Origin: Botryllus schlosseri
Taxonomy: Eukaryota
Assembly (NCBI GenBank): GCA_051294905.1
Contig: CM119381.1
Location: 16,864,001 to 16,928,000, forward strand
Direction: 5' to 3'
DNA: 64,000 nt
The position numbers and the translations under genes are program-made. The notes under the pieces were generated by a model. The model searched no databases. It worked only from the letters and a program-made list of their open reading frames with translations, and was not told the DNA's origin. Below are positions 44,585 to 59,649 of the stretch, in pieces (the stretch's first letter is position 1; every line of letters starts with the position of its first letter).

Positions 44585-47500
44585 TCACTGATAACTCTTC
44601 AAAATTCCGTAAAGAGTACAAGCAGCCTTGCCGTTGGGACACATCTTACTCCATAAATCTGGATGCGTAGACTTCATATCCGTAACATCCTAAACAAAAA
44701 CGCATCACATAGAAATCCCCCAAAAGATTCAGCCACATTCGAATTGTATTGGCGAGCGCGATCATGGGCTGGAAAATGTCGCCTTGCAAAGGACACTACC
44801 AACTGGCAGAGGGGTCATGGTCAAAGTAGCCAGCGTTGCTACTCAGGTGGAAATCACGCCGTGAATTTATATCGAATTGCAAGTAGAAGTAGTGAATTAG
44901 AAGACATGTAAAAACTACTTCAAGCAAAAGCAGAAAATGAAGAACAGAAAAGTACTCAAAAAGTAGCTCTGCTCGATGGGTCGCTGATAAAAACGATACA
45001 AATCTTGCCCAAACCTACATTCTACTTAACAAAATCCAAAGTTTTAAAAGCAGCTATCCCCTAAAACACTGTTAAGTAGAAGTAGTCTAAAAACAGAATA
45101 GGAACAAAATAGGTGGCGAGATAGCGTCGTGGCATAATCCACAGCTGCAACACCAATGGGTTGCGGGTTCGAGCCCGATCGAGGTCGATTCCAGAATTCC
45201 TACCTAAGTGTTGAAGGTTTATCTAGGCTCCTCCTCGCCATCTCATCCGTGTGAGTGGTGTCTTATAAAAGCCTAGAAGTGGGCCGTGCTACAAATCTGC
45301 AGCTACGGCATAAAAATGAAGAGAATTGACCTGGTATAAATGACCATAGTAGTCGACAAGCCCCATGAATACCACAAACAGCAACAAAGGAACAAAATAG
45401 GACGTTATACATTTTTCCTCGATGTTTTCGCGGCACATATGACTCATGATATTCAATACACACGATCTGTGCATATGCATAGTGCGAATGCAGGATATGC
45501 ATCGCTGGACAAGAAGGTGCAGATATAGCCTCCCGGAAATGCCGAGTGCCAAACGGGGAAGCCACAGATACCAGTTTTACTGAGCAGGTCTTTGGTTTAA
45601 CCTAGTCGGGGGTTACGCCCACAACCTACAGATCAAGAAGCCGGACGCTCCACTATTACGCAATCGTGTCGGTGGATAACCAAAATCAAAATAACCACTT
45701 TGGTGAGTAGTAAAAGACCTGACTACCTCTGCCAACTGGAATGCTTTAGAGATACTCAAGATGACTATTACGGAGCGGAGCAACATACTTGTTCTGGAAT
45801 AAAATGAAGATTTGTCGATTCATCGGTTTCGGCGCCGCCTTTCCTATAAGATTGGAGGACCTCTGTACTTGTCAAATGGCACCTGTAGGCAAAAAAGACC
45901 GTGACATGGTTCTCGCAATTACGGCATATTGATGTTCACATAAAACTAGGGTTGTATTGACTCGACTCGAGTGGAGATTTTTTTGGTGAATCGACCCGAA
46001 TCATTTTCCTAAATACGAAAAAGAAGAAGAAGAAAAAGAATAGCAAACCTTCCCCATCATTGGTATTTCGCCTATCGATACTTGAAATAGGACGAGAAAC
46101 TACCAATAGTGAGCAAATTCAATATCATCCGAGAAGAGTTGTAAAAAAGTAGGTGGAACACGACTTAAGCTCAAAACTGAACTGTGAACACAACGAGTCT
46201 TGGTATTATGACTCGGACTCGACCCTCTGCACTGTGACTAGGATTTGACTCAATGGTGAATTGAAAATGACTCGACTCGCGTGAAAACTATACCAGTGAC
46301 TTGTATATGAGTACCTTACAACTTGGTTACAACCTGGCATAGAACTATATAGATTAGGTAACCGTCACAATGTGGTACTCACCTCATCAGAAAGTACGCC
46401 ACCGCTCTGCCGGCACTCAAATTATTTCTGACCAGTCCCATCAGCATCGGTTCGCCAATTTTTTCAATGGACACATTTACCTGAGTTAAGAAAATTCGGT
46501 CGGGCGCTTGAAACATTCGTTAATAGCAGAGGTGGTCAGCAACGAAGTACTTCTACTTTTTCGGAGTACTCAAGTAGGTTTTGTCGACTTACAATACTTA
46601 CTCACATGCTACTGTTTTTAGTCTACTTCCACTTAGACTTATCATTTTTTTACGCAAAACCACTTTATTTTTACTCTCTGCTTGCATCAATTTCACAAAC
46701 AAAATTGTAACAACTTGTCGAAACAGCGCCTGCATCACAGTAACTCAACATATTTTCTAAAATCGCGACTATTTCCAGTGTCGTTTTGCGTGCACCTTGT
46801 ATTGCATTTTCAAAGTAAGCCGCCTCCGATTAGCCGTTAAAAGTAAGTGACCCATCGACCAAATTTGTGTCTTGAAACTATTTGTACATTGAAGAAATAA
46901 ATTTTATACTGCCACTTGATAGTTTGACATGCCTTGGAAATTCTTCCTTCTGCTTTGAGATGTTTTGGAAATTTCTACTACTACTACTACAACTACTAAT
47001 TGAGTAGAAATCTACAGCGTTAGTTCTGCTTCTACTTGAGTATACCAACGTTGACTACTTTTCACCACGTCTGGTTAAAGGCCACAACCAACCTCATCAC
47101 GAATCTCCTTCACTTGCGAGTGGAAAATTTCGTGCAACGCGCCGTCACAGTCGAGTTCGTCAAAAGAAACGAAGTCGTGAATCTCCAATCCGGCCGCGGC
47201 CTGCGCAAGTTGCAAAAAAATATTCGCATATGCGTAGGAGTATTGCTACCTTAACCACTAACCGATGGTTCCGGGTGCCCGCCTGGAACGTCGAGCTGCC
47301 CGGCGCTTTCCGCAAGCCACGAATTTCTCCACTGGAAAATGGCTTTGCCGTCGTCTGTGATAACGATGCCGGCAACACCCAAAGGTTCGGCAAGGTACGC
47401 CTGCAAGTATGTGCAGTGTGCACATTGGTCAGAGGTGATCAGCAACGAATTAGTTCTACCTTTTCAGAGTACCCAAGTAAGGTTTGCCTAATTGCGCGAC

Positions 47501-48959
47501 TTACTCATACAGTCATGTTTTCACGCTATTTCTACTAGATGAGTTTTTATACTGCTCAACTTTTTACAATTTGAATTTCTAAGTGAAACTGTCACAAATG
47601 TTCACATTGGATAGGATTGTAGCGTTAGTATACCAAAGTCGCAGCCATATCATTGATGACTAAGTAAGCATGTGCCCCTACTAAAACTAAAAAATAGCCC
47701 TACTTAGAAACCCGTCGGCTGCTGCAACCATTGAACTTTGGTTAATATGCAGCGTAGGGTTCAACGATTCAATTGGAGCAGTATCATTATCAAGCTATTT
47801 TGCGAGTAGAATAGCTGCTGGCACACAAAACCACCTGCGTCTGATTATAATCCTTGGCTCCCTTGGCCATCAATTCCTCAACTTCGTCAGCCCAATTCGT
47901 CTCCATATAGTCCCTGTAAAACGTGTAAAAGTACCCTAAATCAGATTTCTACGATCAAATCGGATACGCTCGGTAATGTATAAATTCCAATATCCCGGAA
48001 AACTGTCAAGTAGAAGTAGTATAAACCATAAACGCTTGAGTAGTGCAAACAAGCAGGCAAAACCTACTCGATTATTCTGAAAATGTAGAAGTACTTCGTC
48101 ACTCACAACCTCTGCATACCTGTAACAGGTGAGTCCGACGTTGAACGTTAGCTGTGCATTACCATCGTCGGAAGTGTATCGAACCGAGTGGATACGGAAT
48201 TTCTGCGCGTTGAACAGACGCGAGTTCCGTTGTTTTCTTATTTCCCAACGCTCGGCTATGCATTTCTCAAATTCAGGATCCACCTGCCGTAAAATCGAGC
48301 GTCACAAGTCAGTTAATGTCTAGCCCGGCCTTGTAATTACTAATCCTATGCAAATAAAAGTCAAAGGATATCAACGTAAATGTACGAACATCACAGTAGT
48401 CAAAGTTGCCACTAAAGTAGAAGTAAAAGTTAACACCTTGCTTCTACTCAATTACAAGTAAAAGTAGCTTTTTCCAAGCCATGCAAGCTACTTGAAGTGA
48501 AAGTGGAAAATGAACATCTGAAAAGTAGATTTCGTCGAAAAGTCATACTTTTAGCGGGTGGTCCAGTCTGAAATTGCAGGGTGCATCCTTGCGACTAACA
48601 AATCAGCCACTTACCGTCATACAGTGGGTATTTCACTCAGTCGTTATGACAATTTCACGCATAATCGTGAGGGAAAAATATCGCATATTGCTTGCTTATC
48701 AAGTCGTAACATAGATGTGTAAGTAGCCAAAACACATAACCACTTGATGAAGAAGTGCATGTAGGCAAAACCTACTTTACCATTCCGAAAATGTATCCGC
48801 ACTTCCATACTGACTACCTCTTATATTCACATAGCAAACTGTTACCTTCCGATTAAATTCGTCGGACATGGCTACTTTGCACATTGAGAGCGGCAGACCT
48901 GACTTCAATGGAGACGCGAACATGATAGAAATCTCGGGATCAAGAGCGTTACCCTCTGA
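44585..48959 (-). CDS. NUDT22: NUDT22-like Nudix hydrolase module (8 exons)
   Basis: LDPEISIMF..GLP, RLFNAQKFRIHS, GLTCYRDYMETNW, AYLAEPLGVAGIVITDDG, GQLDVPGGHPEP, HEIFHSQVKEIRDEVN, AGRAVAYF, ETDESTNL, LWSKMCPNGKAACTLY. These collinear motifs match NUDT22 as I recall it. Confidence 0.92.
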
Positions 48960-51900
48960 CTGCAAACAAGACGAATCCGCGTCCACAAAAATAAATGATA
49001 TTTTATGGCCAGTAAGACGTACAGAACTGCCAGGATTATCAGAGCCATCAAGCATCGCTATTCCATTGATGCCGCTAACTTGTTCAGCAGGAGACAAGCT
49101 TGATAGAACCTCATCACTTTTGGCATCTTGGGATGGATGAACTGATGGTTCTTCCGAAGAAGAGACCTGGGTAAATAAGTAAAATGTCGATACAACGGAA
49201 TTGTACCAAAGCAAATCCCAATCACACCTTTGTCCAGGACCCGCCTACGGTCACCGATTTACCCGGGACTGCGTTACTGGGTAGTCGTGATAAAATGACC
49301 TGTAACAAGAAAAGTACGATATCGCGTCTGCTTCGCGGAAAATTTCTCCAGCGGATACGATTTTCACACATTATCATTTGATAGCAAGGTGCCATGCGAA
49401 CTGGCATCTCATGTTACAACAAAGACTGGGCAAAGAGACTCTTGGAGGTGCAGAGCTTCAATACACAATTGAATAACATATACATATTGAAACAAACCCG
49501 AATATTTTCGGCTGACGGTCATAAGGTATAATCGTCAATAACTAGTAGAGATTTCAAAGGAACTTAACAGTCGTATCACCAAATATGACGTCACAGGCAC
49601 TAAGTATTCAAATAATTGAGGCGAACAGATTGCTTAGGCTCAGTTTACTAAGACTACGAGCATTGATTGCAACTATTATTGTCAAATGAGGAGAGATGTT
49701 TCTTTGAGTGCTGAAATTATAGTTTCAATAATTTTTTCCAACCATGGAACCTTGCTAAGTTGTAACATAGCATCCAAAATATGTAGCACATAGCTACGCC
49801 TGTCTTTGGGTACGATGACCTCACAGCATTGTCTGAAAACTCTATGAAATTGGTATGGTCCAAAAAACACCAAATTACGTACACAGTCTAATACTCGATT
49901 CGGAATGGAATCACTCAAGAACACAATTGTAGCCAACCCCAGTTACAACGTACCAAACCAACGCAAGAATATATCATCACGCTTTGTTACCTGTGGGCTC
50001 TTGTCCGTTGTGGACATGTGACTGATGACCATGCTTGATGTAGTGTGGCCCCACACCACTTCGACTGGAAAATGAAAGAAAAAGGCTTCATCGCACAGCA
50101 GAGATTGAATTGAATGGCGGACGATTTGGAGGGGCTGTGGGCGAAAACATACAAAGAGGGCGATTTGGGAGGGTGTTGAAAAATTTATAATCAGTGGAAG
50201 TTGATAGTTGTCTCATATCTCAGCGATGCCTAATCATCGTTGAACAAGTTTGTTGCCTTCAAAAATATTTTGATAAGGGTGAGTGAGTCTGAGTGGAAAC
50301 TTGAGATTAAAACAGAGACCTGTCAGTGAACGATTTTCTGTGGTATGCAATCGGTCTGAGAAATCGAAATTAGGACCTTTGTCGTGGTTTTGGCAAAACT
50401 GACAAAGTATGAAAGTACGGTATGGAAAAAGATTGCCATACTATGTCATACTATGCTCTGGAACTTATAAGTAGAAACACCATTGGCACAGCCTGCATTC
50501 ATACTTGACACCATGTGATATTGGATGAATTACACATCTGAATTCACACCCTACTGACTCACCAACATTTCGAGGACCATCAACGCAGTGATGCAGACAC
50601 AACAGGCCGGCTTGTTTCTCACACTCTGCGTTCAACATCGGCGAGCCTAACATACAATGGAACTGACTTGTTGTTCACACTGAGCGTAGATTTTTGCAAT
50701 ATTACCGAGAAAATCTTTAACGAGAGCGTCTTGAAGAGCTTGATACGGCTGGTCGTGGTTACGAAGACGTTCCGCACAGTTTTTACTCAGCATCGTGCTT
50801 ACTAGTTGTTCCCCGCAACCTGGAATAGGACGTAAATTCGTTCATGTGTGGCAAATCGAAAACCCAAGTGCCACAGAAAAACAGCCATTCCGCCAATACT
50901 ACAAAAACTAACCTACACACTTGCAAGCTAGCGTAGGCCCGTTGATCACATTCTCATTCTGAAGATCACCAAGTTATCTCGGAAGAAACCAGGAGTAAGG
51001 TCTCCATTCGGTAAATGTTGGCACTGTTAAATCTAGTTGATGCTGCAGCAGTGTTTCCGAACCTTTTTAGCTTCGGAAACCGGTAAATATTAAAAACAAA
51101 TTTTGCGGGCCGGTGAACCTTCAAAAATCGAAATAATCCGCAATGTAAATACGACAAATACATGCAACACAAAAGATGACATTGGAAACTTCATTTTAAT
51201 GAAAATTCGCTGTTGCCTCTTTGACGCTATTGAAGTTTCTCCAAGGTCCTTTCAAAAACTTCATTTCGATTTTTCGTTTTTTTATTATAAATAACAATGA
51301 CTATTCTGCTTGGCAGATTCCATGATACCCCAAAATGTCGCTAAAATGTACTTTTAAAATAAAACGAATATTGTTTGAAACTCTTTTTAGGTTCCACAAA
51401 TAACTGGTCTTGAATGAGTTGCATGCTACTTTCGAACATCTTGGTGCAATACCTGCAGCATTGTGACGTCCGCCAAGTCCATAGTAGACCATGAATTCTG
51501 CATTACGATTTGCATGCAATTGATGCATAAAATTGTAATATATTCAGGCAGACCTGCAGGAAAGTTGACACGCTACACATACACTGCCCGTTGAGAACCT
51601 CGATCTACTGTATTGAGCTGATAAATATATCCTATTCGTTTGATTTACGGTGCGTGATATGTGAATATTTTATAATGACCGTATCACAGGGACAAGTCAT
51701 AAATAGCATTAAAACCCACCACTCGCAGTTACAGCTACTGAAGGAGAATCTCCTCTTCCCGGCTCGGCCCAACATCCACATCCATAAACAGCAGCCTGCG
51801 CATGTACAGTACATAGTTGCATCTATTGAATACGAGTAACCCGCAATTCACTTTAAAATCCTACCTGACCGACTCTACCAGGCATCTTCAAGACGATCCC

Positions 51901-54900
51901 TCCGCTCGAAACAGCAGAAGCGACGTTCCCGTTCAAATCCAACGCGACAGCGCCAACTGTGTCCAGTCTGATGATAACAACTTCGATTAAACGCGGATTC
52001 AAACAAGCCGAGTATCTCAACTACCTTTCGCGGTCCTGGCAAGCTTCCTGGTGTCGGCGATTACGCGCCAATTTCTCCAGCAGTCTCTGATGATATTTCT
52101 GCCACGACTTGAGAGCAGACTCTACACAAAATTAAATCCGAATTAGGGATTGCAACGAGTTATCTCGCAAACCAGTTCAGAACTTACCACTCACCAAATC
52201 GCCCGATTCGCACATTTTAACGCCGTGCGCTTTGGCCCAGTTTTCCGCCCCGGAGGATACCATGAAGCTGACGAATACTACAAAGTTTATCCACACGTTT
52301 CATCAGTACCAGCCATATTTAGTTTCTACCTTGGCGGAATACGTCCCAATTCTAGTCGACTTCTCCTTCTTTGTTCGGATAGAACTTTGTACGCGGCACG
52401 AACAGGATTTTTGACTTTGCTTACGCAAGCAACGGAACCGAAGTAGCTATCACATCGGTTTGCAGGATCTGAATTACAATCGGAGTAGACTGGTCGTCGA
52501 GTGGTAAAGCCAGTAAAGCTATATTTGATATGCACTACAATCTAGCGGAACTGAATTCAATAAACTCGGCCATAACCAACTGTAATACAAGTCAAAAGAA
52601 AATGACATCATGCTATCTGATTTTCAATGACCGATTGTATTCTGAATGAATTTTTCAATTCGTCAATTTCACAAACTTCCACCTTTATTACTGAGCTGCA
52701 TTCTCAATATTAAAAACGTAAGTCTTGCCGCAACAGCCCACCTTTTGATTAGCACTGAAGAGCAAGCTTAATATTTTCAACATTTATCATTAGTTAGATG
52801 ATAATAGTTAGATAGTTATGATAACCCGTAACACAATTTTAATTTAATCACCACAAAACCGTGACAATCCCAGACATACGTGTCCCGGTGTAGTCATTTC
52901 GCATACCTGAGGATGGCGAAGTATCCATCACACTTGCGTCGCATTCCACCTGACCCGACTCGGTGAGATTCGAACCGTACCCGGCATTTGTCAGTTCGCT
53001 ATCCTGCACAAGAACAATCACAATTTGCACAGGAACATATTCCAAAGTCAAATCATGTGTCAAGTAACGCAAATTTTTAAAGTGACTCGAGTCGAGTCAA
53101 GTTATCTCTAACTTTTTGATTTCGAGTCAACTCCAAGTTATCAAATCATTTTAGTTTGTTTTGTTTGGTTTCAATGTACGGATGGATACACATATTTGCA
53201 TATAGGCTATAGTCAAACTTGGTGCCACACCACTTTTAAAATTCAATTCTTACGAATGAATATATTCGCATGGTCGCAATGATATCATAATGCAGGCCTG
53301 GCAGTTAAATGCATGTCTGTTTTGTCTGCGATTTCGCTCCTGATTGAAGTAACGATATTAAAAACTTTAACGGAAATGGAATCCAGTAAAAGGGTTAGCA
53401 TTGATCATGCGGCTTTGCGAAGGAGAGTATTTGACGACTTGAAAATGGAGTCATAAATTATTACATATTTTCCATACGTCGAGTCCACGTCAAGTTAAGT
53501 CGTTTTAGTAAGTCAAATAATATCGAAAACGTGACTAGAGTCAACTTGAAATGGCAGCAATCATACTTCTAACATCTGTACAGCAAGAGCGGTCGCCTCC
53601 CCTGCCGAGACACCCTCCCTGATTTTGCGACTAACAGCAGTGCAGACCGTTTTACAAAGCTGGCTATAGCCCGGGTATCTTTCGTCAGAATGGTAGCCAG
53701 CGCCTGCAATGGTTTCAGTATAAAAATCTGCGCAAAGACGTTGAACCGAAAGGTACCTACCAACATGAATAGCTATGAATCCAACATCAATCTTTTGACA
53801 TCTTAACGCAAATAAGTATATTAACTTCACATCTGACTAATTAAAAGTAAGTATTCTAAGCCTTGTTATTGCCTTCAAAACTGAATACTGTCAAGTAGAA
53901 GTTGTAGTCTAAAATTAAAACCACTTGAGCGTACTGAGCAAGTAGCCAAAACCTGGTGCAGTATTCAAAAAGGTAGAAGTACTTGGTTACTGACCACCTC
54001 TGAAGCAGACATACCTTAGCGCGGCGAGATCGCAGTACGGTTGGGAGTTGACTTGTACGATATTCGTAACGCTAGGAGGAGACACATCTTTCACCGGCAC
54101 TTCTTCTGATGACGAAGGTTTAGGTAGGGCCGTCGCTTTACCAGAGGCGAGAAATATGTGGTTGTGAATAGTCTGGCAAATAAATTTCAAGTGTTGGACC
54201 GTTGACGAATGGGTCGTAACGATTCGTTCATTCGTTAGGGTTGGGTATAGCAATTCAAGTACTCGAATCTGCATAGAGTATTAATTTTGACGATTGGGGT
54301 ACCAAAAAATTATAGGTTCCTTATTATTTTATGAATGAAAATTGTCATTGCGATACTTTCTTGTGGCAGCGGCAGCCTTGAAACCACAATAAGAGGAAGT
54401 ATATCATTCAATGCATGCAGCAACAGGCTACAGCATTTCTGTATAGTAATGACAGACCTGTGGCGTTGTCTTATATATAGCAATGACACTGTCAGCAAAT
54501 TTGAAATGATTTACATAGAATGATTTACATAGATTATTTACTTTATTGTCGCATAAAAAAATGTATTTGGAGCAGGGTTGTAATGAGGCCCGATTTTTTG
54601 GTGACTCGAATTGACTCGAGTCATTTTTTCAAATCCCTAACATGACTCGACTCGAGTCAATTTGTGTATTGACTCGACTTGTACTCGGGTCATTGCGCAT
54701 GACTCGAACCAAGTCATTTCACTCGAGACATTTCATGGTAACTTCGAAGAACAGTAATTTAACGGTATATATTTTGGGTAATTATGAATAACACATTGAA
54801 AAAATCAGTATCGTAAGATCTACAGGATATGAAACATAGGTATTGGAAACGACGTTTGGGTCTTATATAGATTGAAGTCCATGCGGCATATCGAAGCGTT

Positions 54901-57900
54901 ACACAGGAAATGATAACCTGACAAAGCATGTAATATGTGTATGGTGTGAAATATCGAGAAGAATTGACATTCAATTCAGAATCGAATCAATCAGGTATTC
55001 GAAATTGCCCAATCCTAATTTCTACAAAATGTACCTTTGTGGTGGGAAAGAATCTCTTATTGTCGAGTTTTGGTTTTTCGTTGTCGTCCGCATGAGCGAA
55101 TAATGTATTCAAGACGTAATCGCTGATCATTGATTTCAAGCTTGGAATGTCGTATATTCCTTTGAAAAAACATCTCAATTGTCGGTCTGAAATCGGTGCT
55201 ATTTGCTGAAACGAGAAGACGTTACCGTTCCGGACGAGTTCTCGAACTTTGTTAATGACCCGTTTGTCGAGCTGCGTTGTGTTGGTCCGAGATACTATTT
55301 CGTGATTGGTATGAGAAGCAACAAGCGGAAATCGAAAATAGTGTACATCTGGAGAATAACAATGATGGATAAGCATTTAAGCAACCTAAACAAAGATGAA
55401 CTAAGTTATATTCAGCAATTTAGGAATAGTAGTGATTAGATCAGGGCTTCTTCAACTGGAGCCCATGGACTGAGTCCGCGGACTCTATGTAAAGGGTCCA
55501 TGAAGGGTCGATGTTGAAAATACAACTGCACACTATAAAATTACGTTATCCTAATTTATAAGATATGTCCCTATTTTTGACATGTCCACATAGGCGCTGA
55601 ACTCCGATTTTCCCTAGGTATGCGGTATCGATGACGTCACAAAGGGCTGACGTCATAGTGCGTCAGAATTGACAAATGAGCCGACTCGCAAGCGTTCAAT
55701 ATCACCTGTCACTTGTATATGGTGACAAAATTACGATAGTATTAAGCAGGCGCGCAGCCGGCCGGCCGCTTGCTGAATTGATTTCAAATTTACCAAGGTA
55801 GAATCAGTTTATTATGGTCAAGTGCATGCACCAATGATGATAATAGATCGATCGGATCAGCATCCTAGCGTAACGGCCTCACACGTAGCCTAATACTCGA
55901 CACTACTACGACACATCACGCTACGATAGGATTACTAGCGAACACTCCGACTACGCAGTCAATTAGCGAGCTCGCAATCTCCCGCAACATATTCGCCAAC
56001 ACGCGCGCCGACAATCAGGAAATTTCAATTACTCGGCTCGAGAACAAACGAATACGCATCTGTGGCGACGGCTAATAATCTAAAGTTACAAGAACTATTC
56101 TCACAAATGTGCGTGCTGGACTCTATATTCATTAGTCACTCTGATTGCAGGGGAGTCAGAAGTTTCGATATCAAGAGCCTGCAAGACAATTTTCTGATGT
56201 TCTGTTTTAGTATTAGCGTTAATCAAAATCAATTACGCCGCTGTCTGTTCACGATCAGTATGTATTTTAATCAATTCTGTCCATGTTCAATGTCTGAGCC
56301 AGTCCGACATCACAATCTCGGAAAACGCGGCAGTTCCGGCCGGTGCATCATATCATATTCCGACACAGCAAGTATTAGTGGAAATCAAGTACGCATGTAC
56401 GTGTACGGTGTACGCACGCGTCGCAAATGCTTGCGGACATTCGATGCCATTCAGTTTCGCGATGTCAATCTTTAATCACAATCGAGAGCCAAAGCATTCT
56501 AGGCACGAGACGCGATCGTTAGTCTAATGATGCTATATTTCGTAACAGGCCTATTGCACACACAATTGTGTAGGTAGACCAACGATGGTATCGTGTGCAG
56601 GCCAGCGATGGTATAGTGCGTACTGGGCCTATTCCCGATGCGATTCTTCAAGCCAGCGGAACGAGGCTTGATGGAGGCGCGATAAATCAGGCCAGCGACG
56701 ATCGCAGAGCGCGCGGCAATCAATGACTTCGGAATCATCTCAGCGCGAGATCGCGTTGCGTTACATCGTGCACAAACTATTCTCGCTAATTGGAAACACG
56801 CTTCTCGTTAATTGGCCGTGGCCGCGCACGACACTGATAAAATAAGACTTACGGAATTGCAACTGAATATTAACGTCAGAATGGTCATTTCAAAAGGACG
56901 GGGTTGTGCTACGCGCATGAATGTATTGCTTCTGATTTGATTAAGTGTTCAGCAGCAGTACGAAATACATTGCTTAATTCTAAATCGATCAATTCACCAG
57001 CCAGCCTAGCCGAATTCTGGGTATGCCGCATACCTAAAAAAATTCCTAGGTATGCGCGGCATACCTAGCATACCTGAGTTCAGCGCCTATGCATGTCCAT
57101 GTTATATTTTATTTACTGCGCTCACCACAGCTCAAATCGCCACTAGGACAACACGGTCACTAGTAATTTCACTGCGACTGATGAGACGGCTTGGCCGAAG
57201 TGATGACCTATTTTAATTATATATCCATCATGCAGTTGTTTAGTCATCAACTAGACCAGATGGTAATGAGCCCATGATCAGGAGTATTTGACTGTCCGCA
57301 ATATTGATCCCCGTCAACTACAGTCGTGGTTGTGCAATTCAAAAAAATTTCTCGGAATCTGATAAACTCATCGCCAGGCTTCAAGTGATTCGACTTGACT
57401 CGAGGCATTTTCTCCTAATACTGAAATGACTCGACTCGAGTCAATCTGTGTATTGCCTCGACTTGGACTCGAGTCGTTGCTCATGACTCGAACCAAGTCA
57501 TATGACATGAGACTCAGACGGTCAAGACCGACATTTCATTGTAATTTCGAAGAATAGTGAAGTAACCACACTGCTGGATTTTCCTCTATTGGTACTGGTA
57601 GGAAAATTAGCATATTGTAAATGCGAACCATTCAATATCACCAAATCGAGTTATAAAAAGTGGATTTAACAAGACTTCAACTGGAAACTGAGCAGTCAAC
57701 ACAATGACAGAACTCGGGTTATAATACCATGACTCGGACTCGATCCTCTGCTCGGCAACTTGGACTCGGACTTGAATCGGTGGTTCATTGAAAATGACTC
57801 GACTCGAGTCAAAACTTAAATAGTCAGATTGGCTTGTGACTCGGGGCCTGGAGACTTGGTTAAAACCCTTGTCATCGCATGCAACTCTAAACAAGATCAC

Positions 57901-59649
57901 ATTCACTTTGGTTTCACAAATTAGAATATTCATTCATTTAAACAAGTCTCCTTAGCTCTAGAAAGTTAGCAAATATATGGGGTCAAGGAATGCATAAAAC
58001 ACCTGACCCTGCACATCGAAGAATGCAGAAGAGAAGTCACTAAGCAGTTACCAATCACTGACAAAGTACTTTTACTTCTTTGGAGTATTCAAATGGGCTT
58101 AGGCCTACTTCCACTTCAATTGGACAGTTTTTAGCTGTTGATGCAAATACTAGGACTAGAATACATGCTTGCTATTTCTGGTTATCCTTATGTCAATGGT
58201 ACAGTAAATGGTCATCAAACTGTAAGTATCTACATTTTTAATAACTATAACTTGAAAGATCACAATGAAAGGAATAAACAGACACCTTCATATTTAACCG
58301 GTTTATCCGCATGCAGAGCTTCCAGAAGTCTATCCTTTGCATCATCCTTTGCTCCTTGTGTAACATCAGCAGGATCGACCATTGGCAAACCGAACTCGTT
58401 ATAAACTCTAGCCGTGCGAAACTGTAAATTACAAAACATAATACCGTATTCAAAATTTAGAAAGATACCGATTCTGATATATCATATCAACCTGTATGGA
58501 TGCATTGCAACTTGTTTGATTCAACTGTCTTTTCCTAGAATTCTGTGCATTGCAAGTTTGAATGAGTATTTCACAATGAGACAAGCGTACCTCAATGCAT
58601 GCAACATACTTTGTTAGCTGGTGAGGCCTCGTTACAGACCCACTTCTCTGACTTGATGACTTCGAAGGCGTGACCGAAGTATTGGATCGGGACATTTCCA
58701 TTCAGTTGCTGGAAGTAAATCGCTGTCAAAGAGACATATTTGAGTGCGAAACGGCATACAGTTTATCTGTACTGGTTGCAGTTTTTGAATGTGTGAGATG
58801 GAAACTATGAATCGATGACATGTTTTCAACTAACAGGGCATGTAAGAGGAAATTATAGGCACACGCAACTCGCACAGCCACAGGCATAGTACGAGCATGA
58901 AATATTAGAAAAAGTGGTAGAAAATTAACCGAAGGTAAAATTTTTGTAATAATGAAGAGGTGTCATGGACTTGTAAAGACGAAGTGAGTTCAGATGTCTT
59001 TACAATGAACAAGTCAAAAATTGGTGGCACTGCGTCGGGTTCACTGGTTGGACATAAGGAAAATTTGGTGTGCAGCGTTTTTTTCGGCAACCCAACAATT
59101 TGGTCAGTGAATCCCATGAATCCGGAAAAACAAGTTATTTTTGAACAACCCTACTGTGTACATCTACATGAGTACCAACCATGACCCCTGTATATTGAAG
59201 GGCTTACATCGTAGCCCTAGGCTACTGGAATCGCGGTACGTTTTGCCTGATATATCAGGTGAGCAGCGACGATTTTCCAAGTTGAAGTAATTTAATAAAA
59301 AATAATAAAAAACTAAAACATAGCGTGAGCACAGGACACCGATTCCATACAGGCATTGTAGTAATGCCCAAGTTCATTAATGATAGTCTAACAATGTTTA
59401 CAAAACAATGAAAGGCAAGCTCCAGTCACAAAATGTCGTACTTGATCTAGAGGAGCCATCCCGCTTGAAACGTTTCGATTGGCCTTTGGCATGTGACGCC
59501 GCGCAGAAAAAACTGCCACCGGTGACAGCGAGGAAGCCTTCGATCAATGTTTTTGTGCATCCGGAGAACTTTCCATAGCCGTAGCATTCGTTGGCGTCTT
59601 TATCGAAATCGATCAAATTTTTCTTCAGAAATCTTTCTGCATCATCCAT
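44585..59649 (-). CDS. predicted CaRF-like / Taspase-1 / NUDT22 triple-fusion protein, 28 exons, 1023 aa
   Basis: Exons 59442-59649, 58610-58722, 58492-58542, 58286-58421, 55226-55348, 55035-55159, 54015-54172, 53761-53801, 53567-53703, 52907-53003, 52330-52468, 52188-52267, 52025-52121, 51865-51967, 51720-51795, 50706-50819, 50563-50646, 49991-50064, 49228-49299, 49023-49166, 48846-48959, 48120-48283, 47835-47913, 47263-47400, 47093-47200, 46383-46480, 45789-45882 and 44585-44689 all join through GT-AG introns in matching phase, giving 3072 nt with no internal stop. The true N-terminus may lie further upstream. Confidence 0.72.
45113..45400 (+). mobile_element. candidate tRNA-derived SINE in the last NUDT22 intron
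   Basis: Pol III A-box-like TAGCGTCGTGG (45122-45132) and B-box GGTTCGAGCCC (45166-45176) at tRNA-like spacing, but no full cloverleaf. The 3' boundary is uncertain. Confidence 0.45.
46528..47071. mobile_element. CAGAGGTGG-family MITE, near full length
   Basis: Termini CAGAGGTGGTCAG / TTCACCACGTCTG; near-TSD GTTAATAG / GTTAAAGG. Confidence 0.6.
49222..53801 (-). CDS. TASP1: Taspase-1 (threonine aspartase 1, Ntn-hydrolase) module (12 exons)
   Basis: GFIAIHVGAGYHS, DSELTNAGYGSNLTESGQVECDASVMD, FGSVACVSKVKNPV, GRIPPSFMVSSGAENWA, autocleavage site RLD/[42 protein letters not shown] (catalytic Thr codon 51958-51960), SGCGEQLV, VVWGHTTSSM, ILSRLP..PGKSVTVGG. The unspliced frame stops at 49222-49224. 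Confidence 0.95.
54015..59649 (-). CDS. CARF: CaRF-like (calcium-responsive transcription factor) DNA-binding domain module (7 exons)
   Basis: YFGHAFEVIKSEKWVC, LNQTSCNASIQFRTARVYNEF, YFRFPLVASHTNH, LDKRVINKVRELVRNG, RFFPTTKTIHNHI are collinear with CaRF motifs recalled from memory (KATCPARIYIK, YVQLPTQQAHQYH, LHPQVAHKIQELVSQG, FFPTVNDIKNHI). This needs confirmation by profile search. Confidence 0.75.
55589..57091. mobile_element. hAT-type non-autonomous element, 1503 bp, in CARF-module intron 4
   Basis: Perfect 16-bp TIR CATAGGCGCTGAACTC / GAGTTCAGCGCCTATG; exact TSD CATGTCCA (55581-55588, 57092-57099); CCTAGGTATGC subterminal repeats. Confidence 0.92.

What the first reader, a model, noticed from the sequence alone, without database searches (positions are those of the whole stretch)
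49035..49055. Taspase-like cleavage site (MLD/GSDN) in the linker just before NUDT22
Seen: ATG CTT GAT GGC TCT GAT AAT encodes M-L-D-G-S-D-N at aa 714-720, in an S/E-rich linker. Established: the Taspase-1 consensus is Q-[FILV]-D/G-x-D-D (MLL QVD/GADD and QLD/GVDD). This site matches P2, P1, P1' and P3' and differs at P3 (M for Q) and P4' (N for D). Cleavage after D716 would release a 307-aa product, about the size of stand-alone NUDT22 (about 300 aa). Inference: the protease may release its own fusion partner, a viral-style polyprotein strategy in a cellular gene. P3 Gln matters for the human enzyme, so chance similarity is possible.
Basis: inference. Interest (0 to 1): 0.82.

Follow-up and report, generated by a model that had tools for sequence, protein, structure and literature searches.

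The report
Conserved Taspase cut site before NUDT22
In a sea-squirt gene that fuses the protease Taspase-1 to the enzyme NUDT22, the short motif flagged here is the only part of the linker kept in five sea-squirt species, and it looks like Taspase's own cutting site, so the protease probably cuts its partner free, though this is untested.

Summary
ATG CTT GAT GGC TCT GAT AAT lies on the minus strand at 49055-49035 and encodes M-L-D-G-S-D-N, near the 3' end of a 144-nt linker exon.

Transcript contigs from two studies splice the last Taspase exon to this exon and this exon to NUDT22 exon 1. The result is one open frame, so the fusion is real.

- Fusion orthologs exist in Styela, Ciona, Phallusia and Clavelina.
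- Their linkers are about 24% identical to this one, against 50-72% for the domains.
- All keep [LVM]-D-G-[small] 8-15 residues before NUDT22: PLDGNMDD, QMDGNSD, QLDGNYE, QVDGANDD.
- Three have the canonical Gln at P3.
- The chance of this in all four other linkers is about 6e-6; an unbiased motif search gives p of about 0.02.

The species' own TFIIA keeps QVDGKGD.

Against:
- Met at P3 here (Pro in Styela) fails the strict consensus. Q3A and Q3N block the human enzyme.
- One distant fused transcript lacks the motif.
- Cleavage itself is untested.

No paper mentions the fusion. The scan noted this only on this same stretch.

The parts
49035..49055 (-). Motif M-L-D/G-S-D-N. P3 Met, P2 Leu, P1 Asp (49049-49047), P1' Gly (49046-49044), P2' Ser, P3' Asp, P4' Asn.
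   Evidence: Sequence read. The motif is conserved in orthologs.
49023..49166 (-). Linker exon of 48 codons, from VSSSEEPS to DNPGSS. The motif lies 7 codons before its donor site.
   Evidence: AG/GT borders. Joints 49164|49226 and 48959|49023 appear in transcript contigs of runs X1 and X2.
49167..49227 (-). 61-nt intron. If retained it reads GTG TGA, giving Val then a stop straight after the Taspase domain.
   Evidence: It is spliced out in both transcript contigs.
49228..49299 (-). Last Taspase exon (VILSRLPSNAVPGKSVTVGGSWTK).
   Evidence: The joint 49297|49989 links it to the preceding Taspase exon in X1. It aligns to the C-terminus of stand-alone Taspases.
48960..49022 (-). 63-nt intron, in frame and free of stops. 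Retention would insert 21 residues 8 residues after the scissile bond.
   Evidence: a 155-aa open frame runs through it. It is spliced out in X1 and X2.
48846..48959 (-). First NUDT22 exon (SEGNALDPEISIMF...FNRK).
51865..51967 (-). Taspase exon with the autoprocessing site and nucleophile, LD/TVGAVALD.
   Evidence: Pfam PF01112 match, E 3.8e-11. Alignment with orthologs.
44585..48283 (-). Remaining NUDT22 exons: 48120-48283, 47835-47913, 47263-47400, 47093-47200, 46383-46480, 45789-45882, and 44585-44689 including the stop.
44585..59649 (-). The whole CaRF-like / Taspase-1 / NUDT22 fusion gene.
   Evidence: tblastn of the Styela ortholog P0001 covers its residues 4-1046 across this span. Orthologs carry PF15299 and PF01112.

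Best explanation
The motif is this species' version of a conserved Taspase-type processing site. It sits in the disordered linker of a tunicate-specific fusion protein: CaRF-like domain, then Taspase-1, then linker, then NUDT22.

Proposed mechanism:
- The Taspase domain first matures by its usual autoproteolysis at LD/T.
- Its N-terminal Thr then attacks the linker after Asp716.
- The linker can reach the active site on the same chain, because about 40 disordered residues separate the end of the Taspase fold from P1. It could also reach the partner chain of a dimer.
- The cut separates CaRF-Taspase from a 307-residue NUDT22 that starts with Gly-Ser-Asp-Asn.

Shown here: the fused mRNA, the single open frame, intact catalytic motifs, conservation of the motif, and its position just before the natural NUDT22 start. 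Inferred: that cleavage happens, that Taspase is the enzyme, and that Met at P3 is tolerated because the substrate is tethered to the enzyme.
For: 1. The fusion is real. Transcript contigs of 797 nt (X1) and 1170 nt (X2) come from two studies. They carry the joints 49297|49989, 49164|49226, 48959|49023, 48281|48844 and onwards. The spliced exons give one uninterrupted frame.

2. Fusion orthologs exist in Styela clava, Ciona intestinalis, Phallusia mammillata and Clavelina lepadiformis. Stand-alone Taspases of other animals end where the linker begins.

3. Compared with this linker, the ortholog linkers are about 24% identical, against 59-72% for Taspase beta and 50-62% for NUDT22. Yet each holds one h-D-G-small motif 8-15 residues before NUDT22: AMLDGSDN, IPLDGNMDD, MQMDGNSD, GQLDGNYE, SQVDGANDD. 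[LIVMF]DG occurs only 1-2 times in each protein of about 1000 residues.

4. Shuffle tests. The chance that all four non-window linkers hold hDG is about 6e-6. An unbiased search for the best shared 5-mer or 6-mer picks LDGSD(N), with p about 0.02.

5. Three orthologs match the published Q-[ILV(M)]-D/G core. P2' is flexible and one Asp at P3' or P4' suffices (PMC3102056). REV3L QLDGTAD and TFIIA QVDGTGD are validated sites of this shape (PMC13408197, PMC5668323).

6. Selection acts on the protein. Styela uses TTG GAT GGG where the window has CTT GAT GGC.

7. The species still has a canonical trans substrate: its TFIIA-L holds QVDGKGD.

8. Human NUDT22 Met1/Asp2 aligns 10-11 residues after the predicted new N-terminus of the Styela ortholog.

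9. The fusion gene is the only detectable copy of either the Taspase or the NUDT22 exon in the 495.5-Mb genome.
Against: - P3 is Met here and Pro in Styela. For human Taspase1 in a trans biosensor, Q3A and Q3N abolish cleavage (PMC3102056, Table 1).
- All validated substrates I could check have Gln at P3.
- P4' Asn has not been tested in the literature I read.
- A distant fused transcript (P0017, marine metatranscriptome, 38% identity) has a short Lys-rich linker with no h-D-G.
- Only five species could be compared.
- No experiment or proteomic evidence of the cut exists.
- The structure-based docking job gave no verdict.
- The unbiased motif test is only modestly significant (p about 0.02).
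Confidence: 0.55

Rival explanations
1. Relic site. The ancestral ascidian fusion was cut by Taspase at Q-h-D/G. In the lineage of this species and Styela the P3 Gln was lost (Met, Pro), and the site is now cut poorly or not at all. The protein then works as an uncleaved fusion. A Taspase-only form could come instead from retention of the 61-nt intron that holds a stop.
For: Q3A and Q3N abolish cleavage by the human enzyme (PMC3102056). The two closest relatives, window and Styela, both lack Gln at P3. The species' own TFIIA keeps Gln, so the enzyme's preference has probably not shifted. A stop follows the Taspase exon directly if the intron is retained.
Against: If the site were dead it should have decayed like the rest of the linker. 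Window and Styela share about a quarter of aligned linker residues, yet both keep L-D-G, a small P2' residue and Asp at P3' or P4'. They do so with different codons. Intron retention was not seen in either transcript contig.
Confidence: 0.2
2. The motif is conserved for a reason other than Taspase cleavage. Examples are a site for another Asp-specific protease, a docking or turn element needed by NUDT22, or an Asp-Gly isomerisation hot spot.
For: Only h-D-G and a small residue are shared by all five species. Gln at P3 and the acidic P3'/P4' residues vary. P0017 does without the motif.
Against: The motif lies outside the NUDT22 fold as defined by the human structure. Stand-alone NUDT22 proteins P0007 and P0008 have no such leader. 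P4 to P2 (AML, IPL, MQM, GQL, SQV) do not fit caspase-type D/E-x-x-D sites, judged from my own knowledge. Three species match the Taspase core exactly, and the motif sits on the same chain as a Taspase.
Confidence: 0.12
3. Chance resemblance in an acidic, Gly- and Ser-rich linker.
For: In the window alone hDG arises in 7% of shuffles.
Against: The same core appears at the same place in four further species. The joint chance is about 6e-6, and the unbiased search gives p about 0.02.
Confidence: 0.05
4. No fusion protein at this point. The ATG of M-L-D would be the start codon of a separate NUDT22 mRNA, and Taspase and NUDT22 would be neighbouring genes.
For: An ATG stands at P3, and the product would have the size of a stand-alone NUDT22. 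Contigs cannot rule out an extra internal transcription start.
Against: The last Taspase exon is spliced to the linker exon and that exon to NUDT22 in contigs from two studies, all in one frame. Annotated orthologs are single proteins of 1000-1059 residues. Met at this position is not conserved; it is Pro, Gln, Gln and Gln in the others.
Confidence: 0.03

Closest known systems
Taspase1 substrate sites in MLL1 (CS2 QLD/GVDD), TFIIA (QVD/GTGD) and REV3L (QLD/GTAD)
   Same: Asp at P1, Gly at P1', Leu at P2, and an Asp within P3'-P4'. The site lies in a disordered stretch between two folded parts. Three ascidian orthologs also have Gln at P3 (PMC3102056, PMC5668323, PMC13408197).
   Different: All known substrates are separate proteins cut in trans, and their two halves usually stay together. 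Here the site is on the protease's own polypeptide, and the part released is an unrelated enzyme. P3 is Met in this species.
Taspase1 / type-2 asparaginase autoprocessing (human D233/T234)
   Same: Same catalytic Thr and the same L-D at P2-P1. The window reads RLD/TVGAV.
   Different: Autoprocessing creates the nucleophile itself (D/T bond, intramolecular N-O shift). The linker site is a D/G bond that needs the already mature enzyme.
Viral and retroelement polyproteins whose embedded protease releases its neighbours
   Same: Protease and cleavage site share one chain. Cleavage would yield separate functional proteins.
   Different: This is a single-copy cellular gene conserved in ascidians. 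It has a single predicted site. No h-D-G lies between the CaRF-like and Taspase parts.
Cellular fusion precursors such as ubiquitin-ribosomal protein fusions and Nup98-Nup96
   Same: Two unrelated mature proteins are made from one open reading frame and separated after translation. This comparison rests on my own knowledge and was not tested here.
   Different: Those are cut by separate deubiquitinases or by an autoproteolytic fold. They are not cut by a sequence-specific endopeptidase domain that recognises a linker motif.

Membership tests
Taspase1 cleavage site (consensus Q-[FILV]-D/G-x-D-D; PMC3102056, PMC9121324) | Asp at P1 and Gly at P1' | tested here: met
   GAT GGC at 49049-49044 on the minus strand. 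D-G is kept in all five ascidian linkers.
Taspase1 cleavage site (consensus Q-[FILV]-D/G-x-D-D; PMC3102056, PMC9121324) | Hydrophobic Leu, Ile, Val (or Phe) at P2 | tested here: met
   Leu in the window, Styela and Phallusia; Val in Clavelina; Met in Ciona.
Taspase1 cleavage site (consensus Q-[FILV]-D/G-x-D-D; PMC3102056, PMC9121324) | Gln at P3 (Q3A and Q3N abolish cleavage by the human enzyme) | tested here: not met
   Met in the window and Pro in Styela. Gln in Ciona, Phallusia and Clavelina. The window's site is therefore not a strict consensus member, although its orthologs are.
Taspase1 cleavage site (consensus Q-[FILV]-D/G-x-D-D; PMC3102056, PMC9121324) | At least one Asp at P3' or P4', with a small residue tolerated at the other | tested here: inconclusive
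   P3' is Asp, which is met. P4' is Asn, a residue not covered by the published scan. Styela, Ciona and Clavelina have Asp at P4'. Phallusia has Tyr-Glu.
Taspase1 cleavage site (consensus Q-[FILV]-D/G-x-D-D; PMC3102056, PMC9121324) | Actual cleavage that depends on the Taspase nucleophile | not testable with these tools
   This needs expression or proteomics. The docking job gave no verdict.
Active Taspase-1 (Pfam PF01112, Ntn hydrolase) | Autoprocessing site with nucleophile Thr, plus the conserved GRVGQ and GCGE blocks | tested here: met
   LD/TVGAVALD, PGRVGQAA and SGCGEQL are present in the spliced frame. The invariant columns of 26 Taspases are kept in the Styela ortholog.
NUDT22 | Full-length homology to the solved human NUDT22 | tested here: met
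   Styela ortholog residues 745-1059 match PDB 5LF9/5LOR with E about 3e-61 over chain residues 2-286. The window's NUDT22 part is 62% identical to Styela's.
Single fused gene (not two neighbouring genes) | Spliced mRNA joining both parts in one frame, conserved in relatives | tested here: met
   Joints in contigs of two studies. No stop in the spliced frame. Four annotated ortholog fusions. Styela has the same exon layout.

The most novel reading that the evidence does not exclude
A cellular protease carries its own substrate. In ascidians the only Taspase gene and the only NUDT22 gene are one polyprotein, and Taspase releases NUDT22 by cutting a built-in site. Where the site is tethered to the enzyme, the otherwise essential P3 Gln has been free to drift (Met, Pro). 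That would make this a natural experiment on how cis presentation relaxes Taspase specificity. The uncleaved form could hold a UDP-sugar hydrolase on a DNA-binding CaRF-like module until Taspase becomes active.
Probability: 0.3. Interest if true: 0.85.

Novelty: new variant of a known kind. Interest (0 to 1): 0.72.

Why it matters
In the papers read here, every Taspase1 substrate named is a separate protein: nuclear regulators such as MLL, TFIIA and REV3L, plus Myo1f. No case is described of the enzyme being fused to something it cuts. No paper in the searched library mentions Taspase together with NUDT22 or with Ciona.

If the site is used, three things follow:
- It gives a simple self-contained assay for Taspase activity and specificity. 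One construct would serve, with a band shift as read-out.
- It is a natural series of P3 variants (Gln, Met, Pro) for asking what tethering does to substrate recognition.
- It is a rare example of a cellular gene fusion that is undone after translation.

It also links Taspase to NUDT22, a UDP-glucose/galactose hydrolase, in a Rosetta-stone sense that could be tested in other animals.

Tried and rejected
1. Docking of the Styela linker (residues 712-760) onto the Styela Taspase alpha and beta chains gave no verdict. The score was 0.00 and the partner was disordered (pLDDT 31). This counts neither for nor against.

2. A search for shorter protein fragments spanning the junction in other tunicates (P0001:640-860) found nothing. 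The comparison therefore rests on five species plus P0017.

3. I looked for a second canonical substrate, the MLL/Trithorax site, in the own genome. FYRN and FYRC hits were located. I scanned 40 kb upstream of the lone FYRC exon on C11. No Q-h-D-G was found. The only hit was an unverified 56-codon open frame reading PLVDGDDR. This was not pursued, because I could not show it is an exon.

4. I considered two separate genes with the ATG as the NUDT22 start. This was rejected on the splice chain and on the non-conserved Met.

5. I considered the motif as an exonic splicing signal. This is unlikely because the Leu and Gly codons differ between the window and Styela.

6. I considered post-cleavage N-myristoylation of the new Gly. 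The residues after Gly do not fit the usual rule as I know it, and this was not tested.

7. Rfam on the intron with a strong read pile-up (49300-49990) gave no match.

8. Within-species variants in the two transcript contigs give 2 non-synonymous and 4 synonymous changes in the linker exon, none in the motif. That is too few to weigh.

9. The raw-read RNA runs X11 and X15 gave almost no reads on the gene. Junction counts and isoform ratios could therefore not be measured.

Full report
**What is at the coordinates.** The 21 bases are real but lie on the minus strand. Positions 49055 to 49035 read ATG CTT GAT GGC TCT GAT AAT, which encodes M-L-D-G-S-D-N. The window is eukaryotic DNA with short GT-AG introns, and the gene runs on the minus strand from about 59649 to 44585. 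The motif sits in a 144-nt exon (49023-49166) that encodes a Ser/Glu-rich stretch. Upstream lies the last Taspase exon (49228-49299), separated by a 61-nt intron. Downstream lies the first NUDT22 exon (48846-48959), separated by a 63-nt intron. Pfam confirms Asparaginase_2 (PF01112) on the exon holding LD/TVGAV, with E 3.8e-11, and gives a weak NUDIX signal on a NUDT22 exon.

**Is the fusion real?** One call of read laying on 47001-53000 showed transcript contigs from two studies: X1, 797 nt, 2015, and X2, 1170 nt, 2021. They carry the joints 49297|49989, 49164|49226, 48959|49023, 48281|48844, 47912|48119, 47399|47834 and 47199|47262. All of them fit GT-AG borders. Joining these exons gives one frame without a stop, running from the Taspase alpha subunit through the linker to the end of NUDT22. 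The distance from the nucleophile Thr to the Asp of the motif is 211 residues, and 307 residues follow the Asp. Contigs cannot rule out additional transcripts, and the two raw-read runs gave too few reads to count isoforms.

**Relatives.** A search of the representative protein library with one NUDT22 exon found a 1059-residue protein (P0001) with the match at residues 789-843. A follow-up search named it and found more:
- Styela clava, P0001
- Ciona intestinalis, P0014, 1002 aa
- Phallusia mammillata, P0015, 769 aa
- Clavelina lepadiformis, P0016, 1011 aa
- an unnamed 701-aa product of a JGI metatranscriptome contig, P0017

The full-length ones carry PF15299 (CaRF/ALS2CR8) and PF01112. The window therefore comes from an ascidian; Styela is the closest ortholog compared, 72% identical in Taspase beta and 62% in NUDT22. 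Taspases of vertebrates, a brachiopod, a hemichordate, cnidarians and arthropods are stand-alone proteins of 370-440 residues. They end within a few residues of the point where the ascidian linker begins. In the window's own 495.5-Mb genome, the NUDT22 exon and the Taspase nucleophile exon each occur once.

**The decisive comparison.** Compared with this linker, the ortholog linkers are about 24% identical over the residues that can be aligned at all. The flanking domains are 50-72% identical. Each of the five ascidian linkers nevertheless holds one motif of the same shape, 8-15 residues before the conserved start of NUDT22:

| Species | Motif |
|---|---|
| Window | A-M-L-D-G-S-D-N |
| Styela | I-P-L-D-G-N-M-D-D |
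| Ciona | M-Q-M-D-G-N-S-D |
| Phallusia | G-Q-L-D-G-N-Y-E |
| Clavelina | S-Q-V-D-G-A-N-D-D |

- [LIVMF]-D-G occurs only once or twice in each whole protein, and one occurrence is always this one.
- In composition-preserving shuffles, each linker holds the pattern by chance in 2.5-15% of trials. The joint chance for the four species that were not used to propose the motif is about 6e-6.
- A search that does not know the pattern takes the best shared k-mer by BLOSUM62, seeded from the window. It returns LDGSD and LDGSDN as the top 5-mer and 6-mer, with 124 and 101 of 5000 shuffles doing as well.
- In Phallusia that search chose a second D-G (EDGSD) instead of QLDG, so the alignment there is ambiguous.
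- Selection acts on the protein, not the DNA. Styela encodes L-D-G as TTG GAT GGG and the window as CTT GAT GGC.
- The exon layout is the same in Styela, with the motif 8 codons before the linker exon's donor site.

**Comparison with what is known about Taspase.**
- The published scan of MLL CS2 found that Q3A, Q3N, L2A, D1A and G1'A abolish cleavage and that L2I is tolerated.
- P2' is free. At least one of P3' and P4' must be Asp, with a small residue allowed at the other (PMC3102056).
- The refined consensus is Q-[FILV]-D/G-x-D-D (PMC9121324).
- Validated sites include TFIIA QVDGTGD (PMC5668323) and REV3L QLDGTAD (PMC13408197).
- Clavelina (QVDGAND), Ciona (QMDGNSD) and Phallusia (QLDG...) therefore fit the core. 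The window and Styela fit at P2, P1, P1' and the acidic P3'/P4' but not at P3.
- The window species still has a canonical substrate. An apparently intronless TFIIA-L gene elsewhere in its genome encodes QVDGKGD just before the acidic tract. Its Taspase has therefore probably kept the usual preference.

**Where the cut would fall.** The Styela segment that would be released (residues 745-1059) aligns with solved human NUDT22 over chain residues 2-286, with E about 3e-61. Human Met1/Asp2 falls 10-11 residues after the new N-terminus. Stand-alone NUDT22 proteins found start at the same point. The motif thus lies outside the NUDT22 fold and directly in front of it. Between 24 residues (Ciona) and 55 residues (Clavelina) separate the end of the Taspase fold from P1; the window has 40. 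In my estimate that is long enough for a disordered chain to reach the active site of its own or a partner subunit. No h-D-G lies between the CaRF-like part and Taspase, so only one cut is predicted.

**Weighing.** The best reading is that the ancestral ascidian fusion acquired or kept a Taspase site in the linker and that the site is still under selection. Three things stay uncertain:
- Whether this species' Met-P3 version is cut efficiently.
- Why P0017, at 38% identity and with a short Lys-rich linker, lacks the motif.
- Whether cleavage occurs at all.

I put 0.55 on active self-processing in this species, 0.2 on a decayed relic, 0.12 on another function, 0.05 on chance and 0.03 on a separate NUDT22 start. 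The docking job gave no verdict and is not counted.

**Novelty.** No paper in the searched library mentions Taspase with NUDT22 or with Ciona. Public records call the proteins uncharacterised. The protease, the site type and the idea of a self-processing polyprotein are all known. What is new is the combination: a Taspase with a built-in, conserved site that would free an unrelated enzyme.

Noticed in passing
window 49167-49227 (minus strand): The 61-nt intron after the last Taspase exon begins GTG TGA. Retention would therefore end the protein one residue after the Taspase domain. Both transcript contigs have it spliced out. Ciona savignyi database models end by reading into the equivalent intron.
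   Followed up: partly
window 48960-49022 (minus strand): The 63-nt intron between the linker exon and NUDT22 exon 1 is in frame and has no stop. Retention would insert 21 residues 8 residues after the putative scissile bond without breaking the frame. It is spliced out in both contigs.
   Followed up: partly
window 49484-49564, inside the 49300-49990 intron: There is a very high contig depth (about 800 in X1 and 300 in X2, against 5-30 on the exons). Loose ends flank it on both sides, and raw reads match only partly. A short segment here is shared with abundant or repeated transcripts. Rfam has no match.
   Followed up: partly
L002 21097-23078 (Styela clava locus): A second, broken copy of the last Taspase exon, the linker exon and NUDT22 exon 1 lies about 10 kb downstream within the annotated gene span. 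It has in-frame stops and reads ...LVSVDGNTNDD... at the motif.
   Followed up: no
L006 1456-2442 (G000:C14, about 11440955-11441893): TFIIA large subunit appears as a single 328-codon open frame without introns. It has a canonical Taspase site QVDGKGD in front of a long Asp run.
   Followed up: partly
G000:C11:11097429 (minus strand), in L007: A 56-codon open frame reads ...VIEPLVDGDDREKH..., about 7.4 kb upstream of a lone FYRC exon (C11:11089844-11090026). If that gene is the Trithorax/MLL ortholog, this could be a Taspase-like site with Leu at P3. I could not show that it is an exon.
   Followed up: partly
P0006 (618 aa): A protein from another organism holds two NUDT22 units in tandem and no Taspase part.
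   Followed up: no
window 47001-53000: The transcript contigs differ from the window at about 1-5% of exon positions, mostly at synonymous sites. The RNA therefore comes from a different, fairly divergent individual or population under the same species label.
   Followed up: partly
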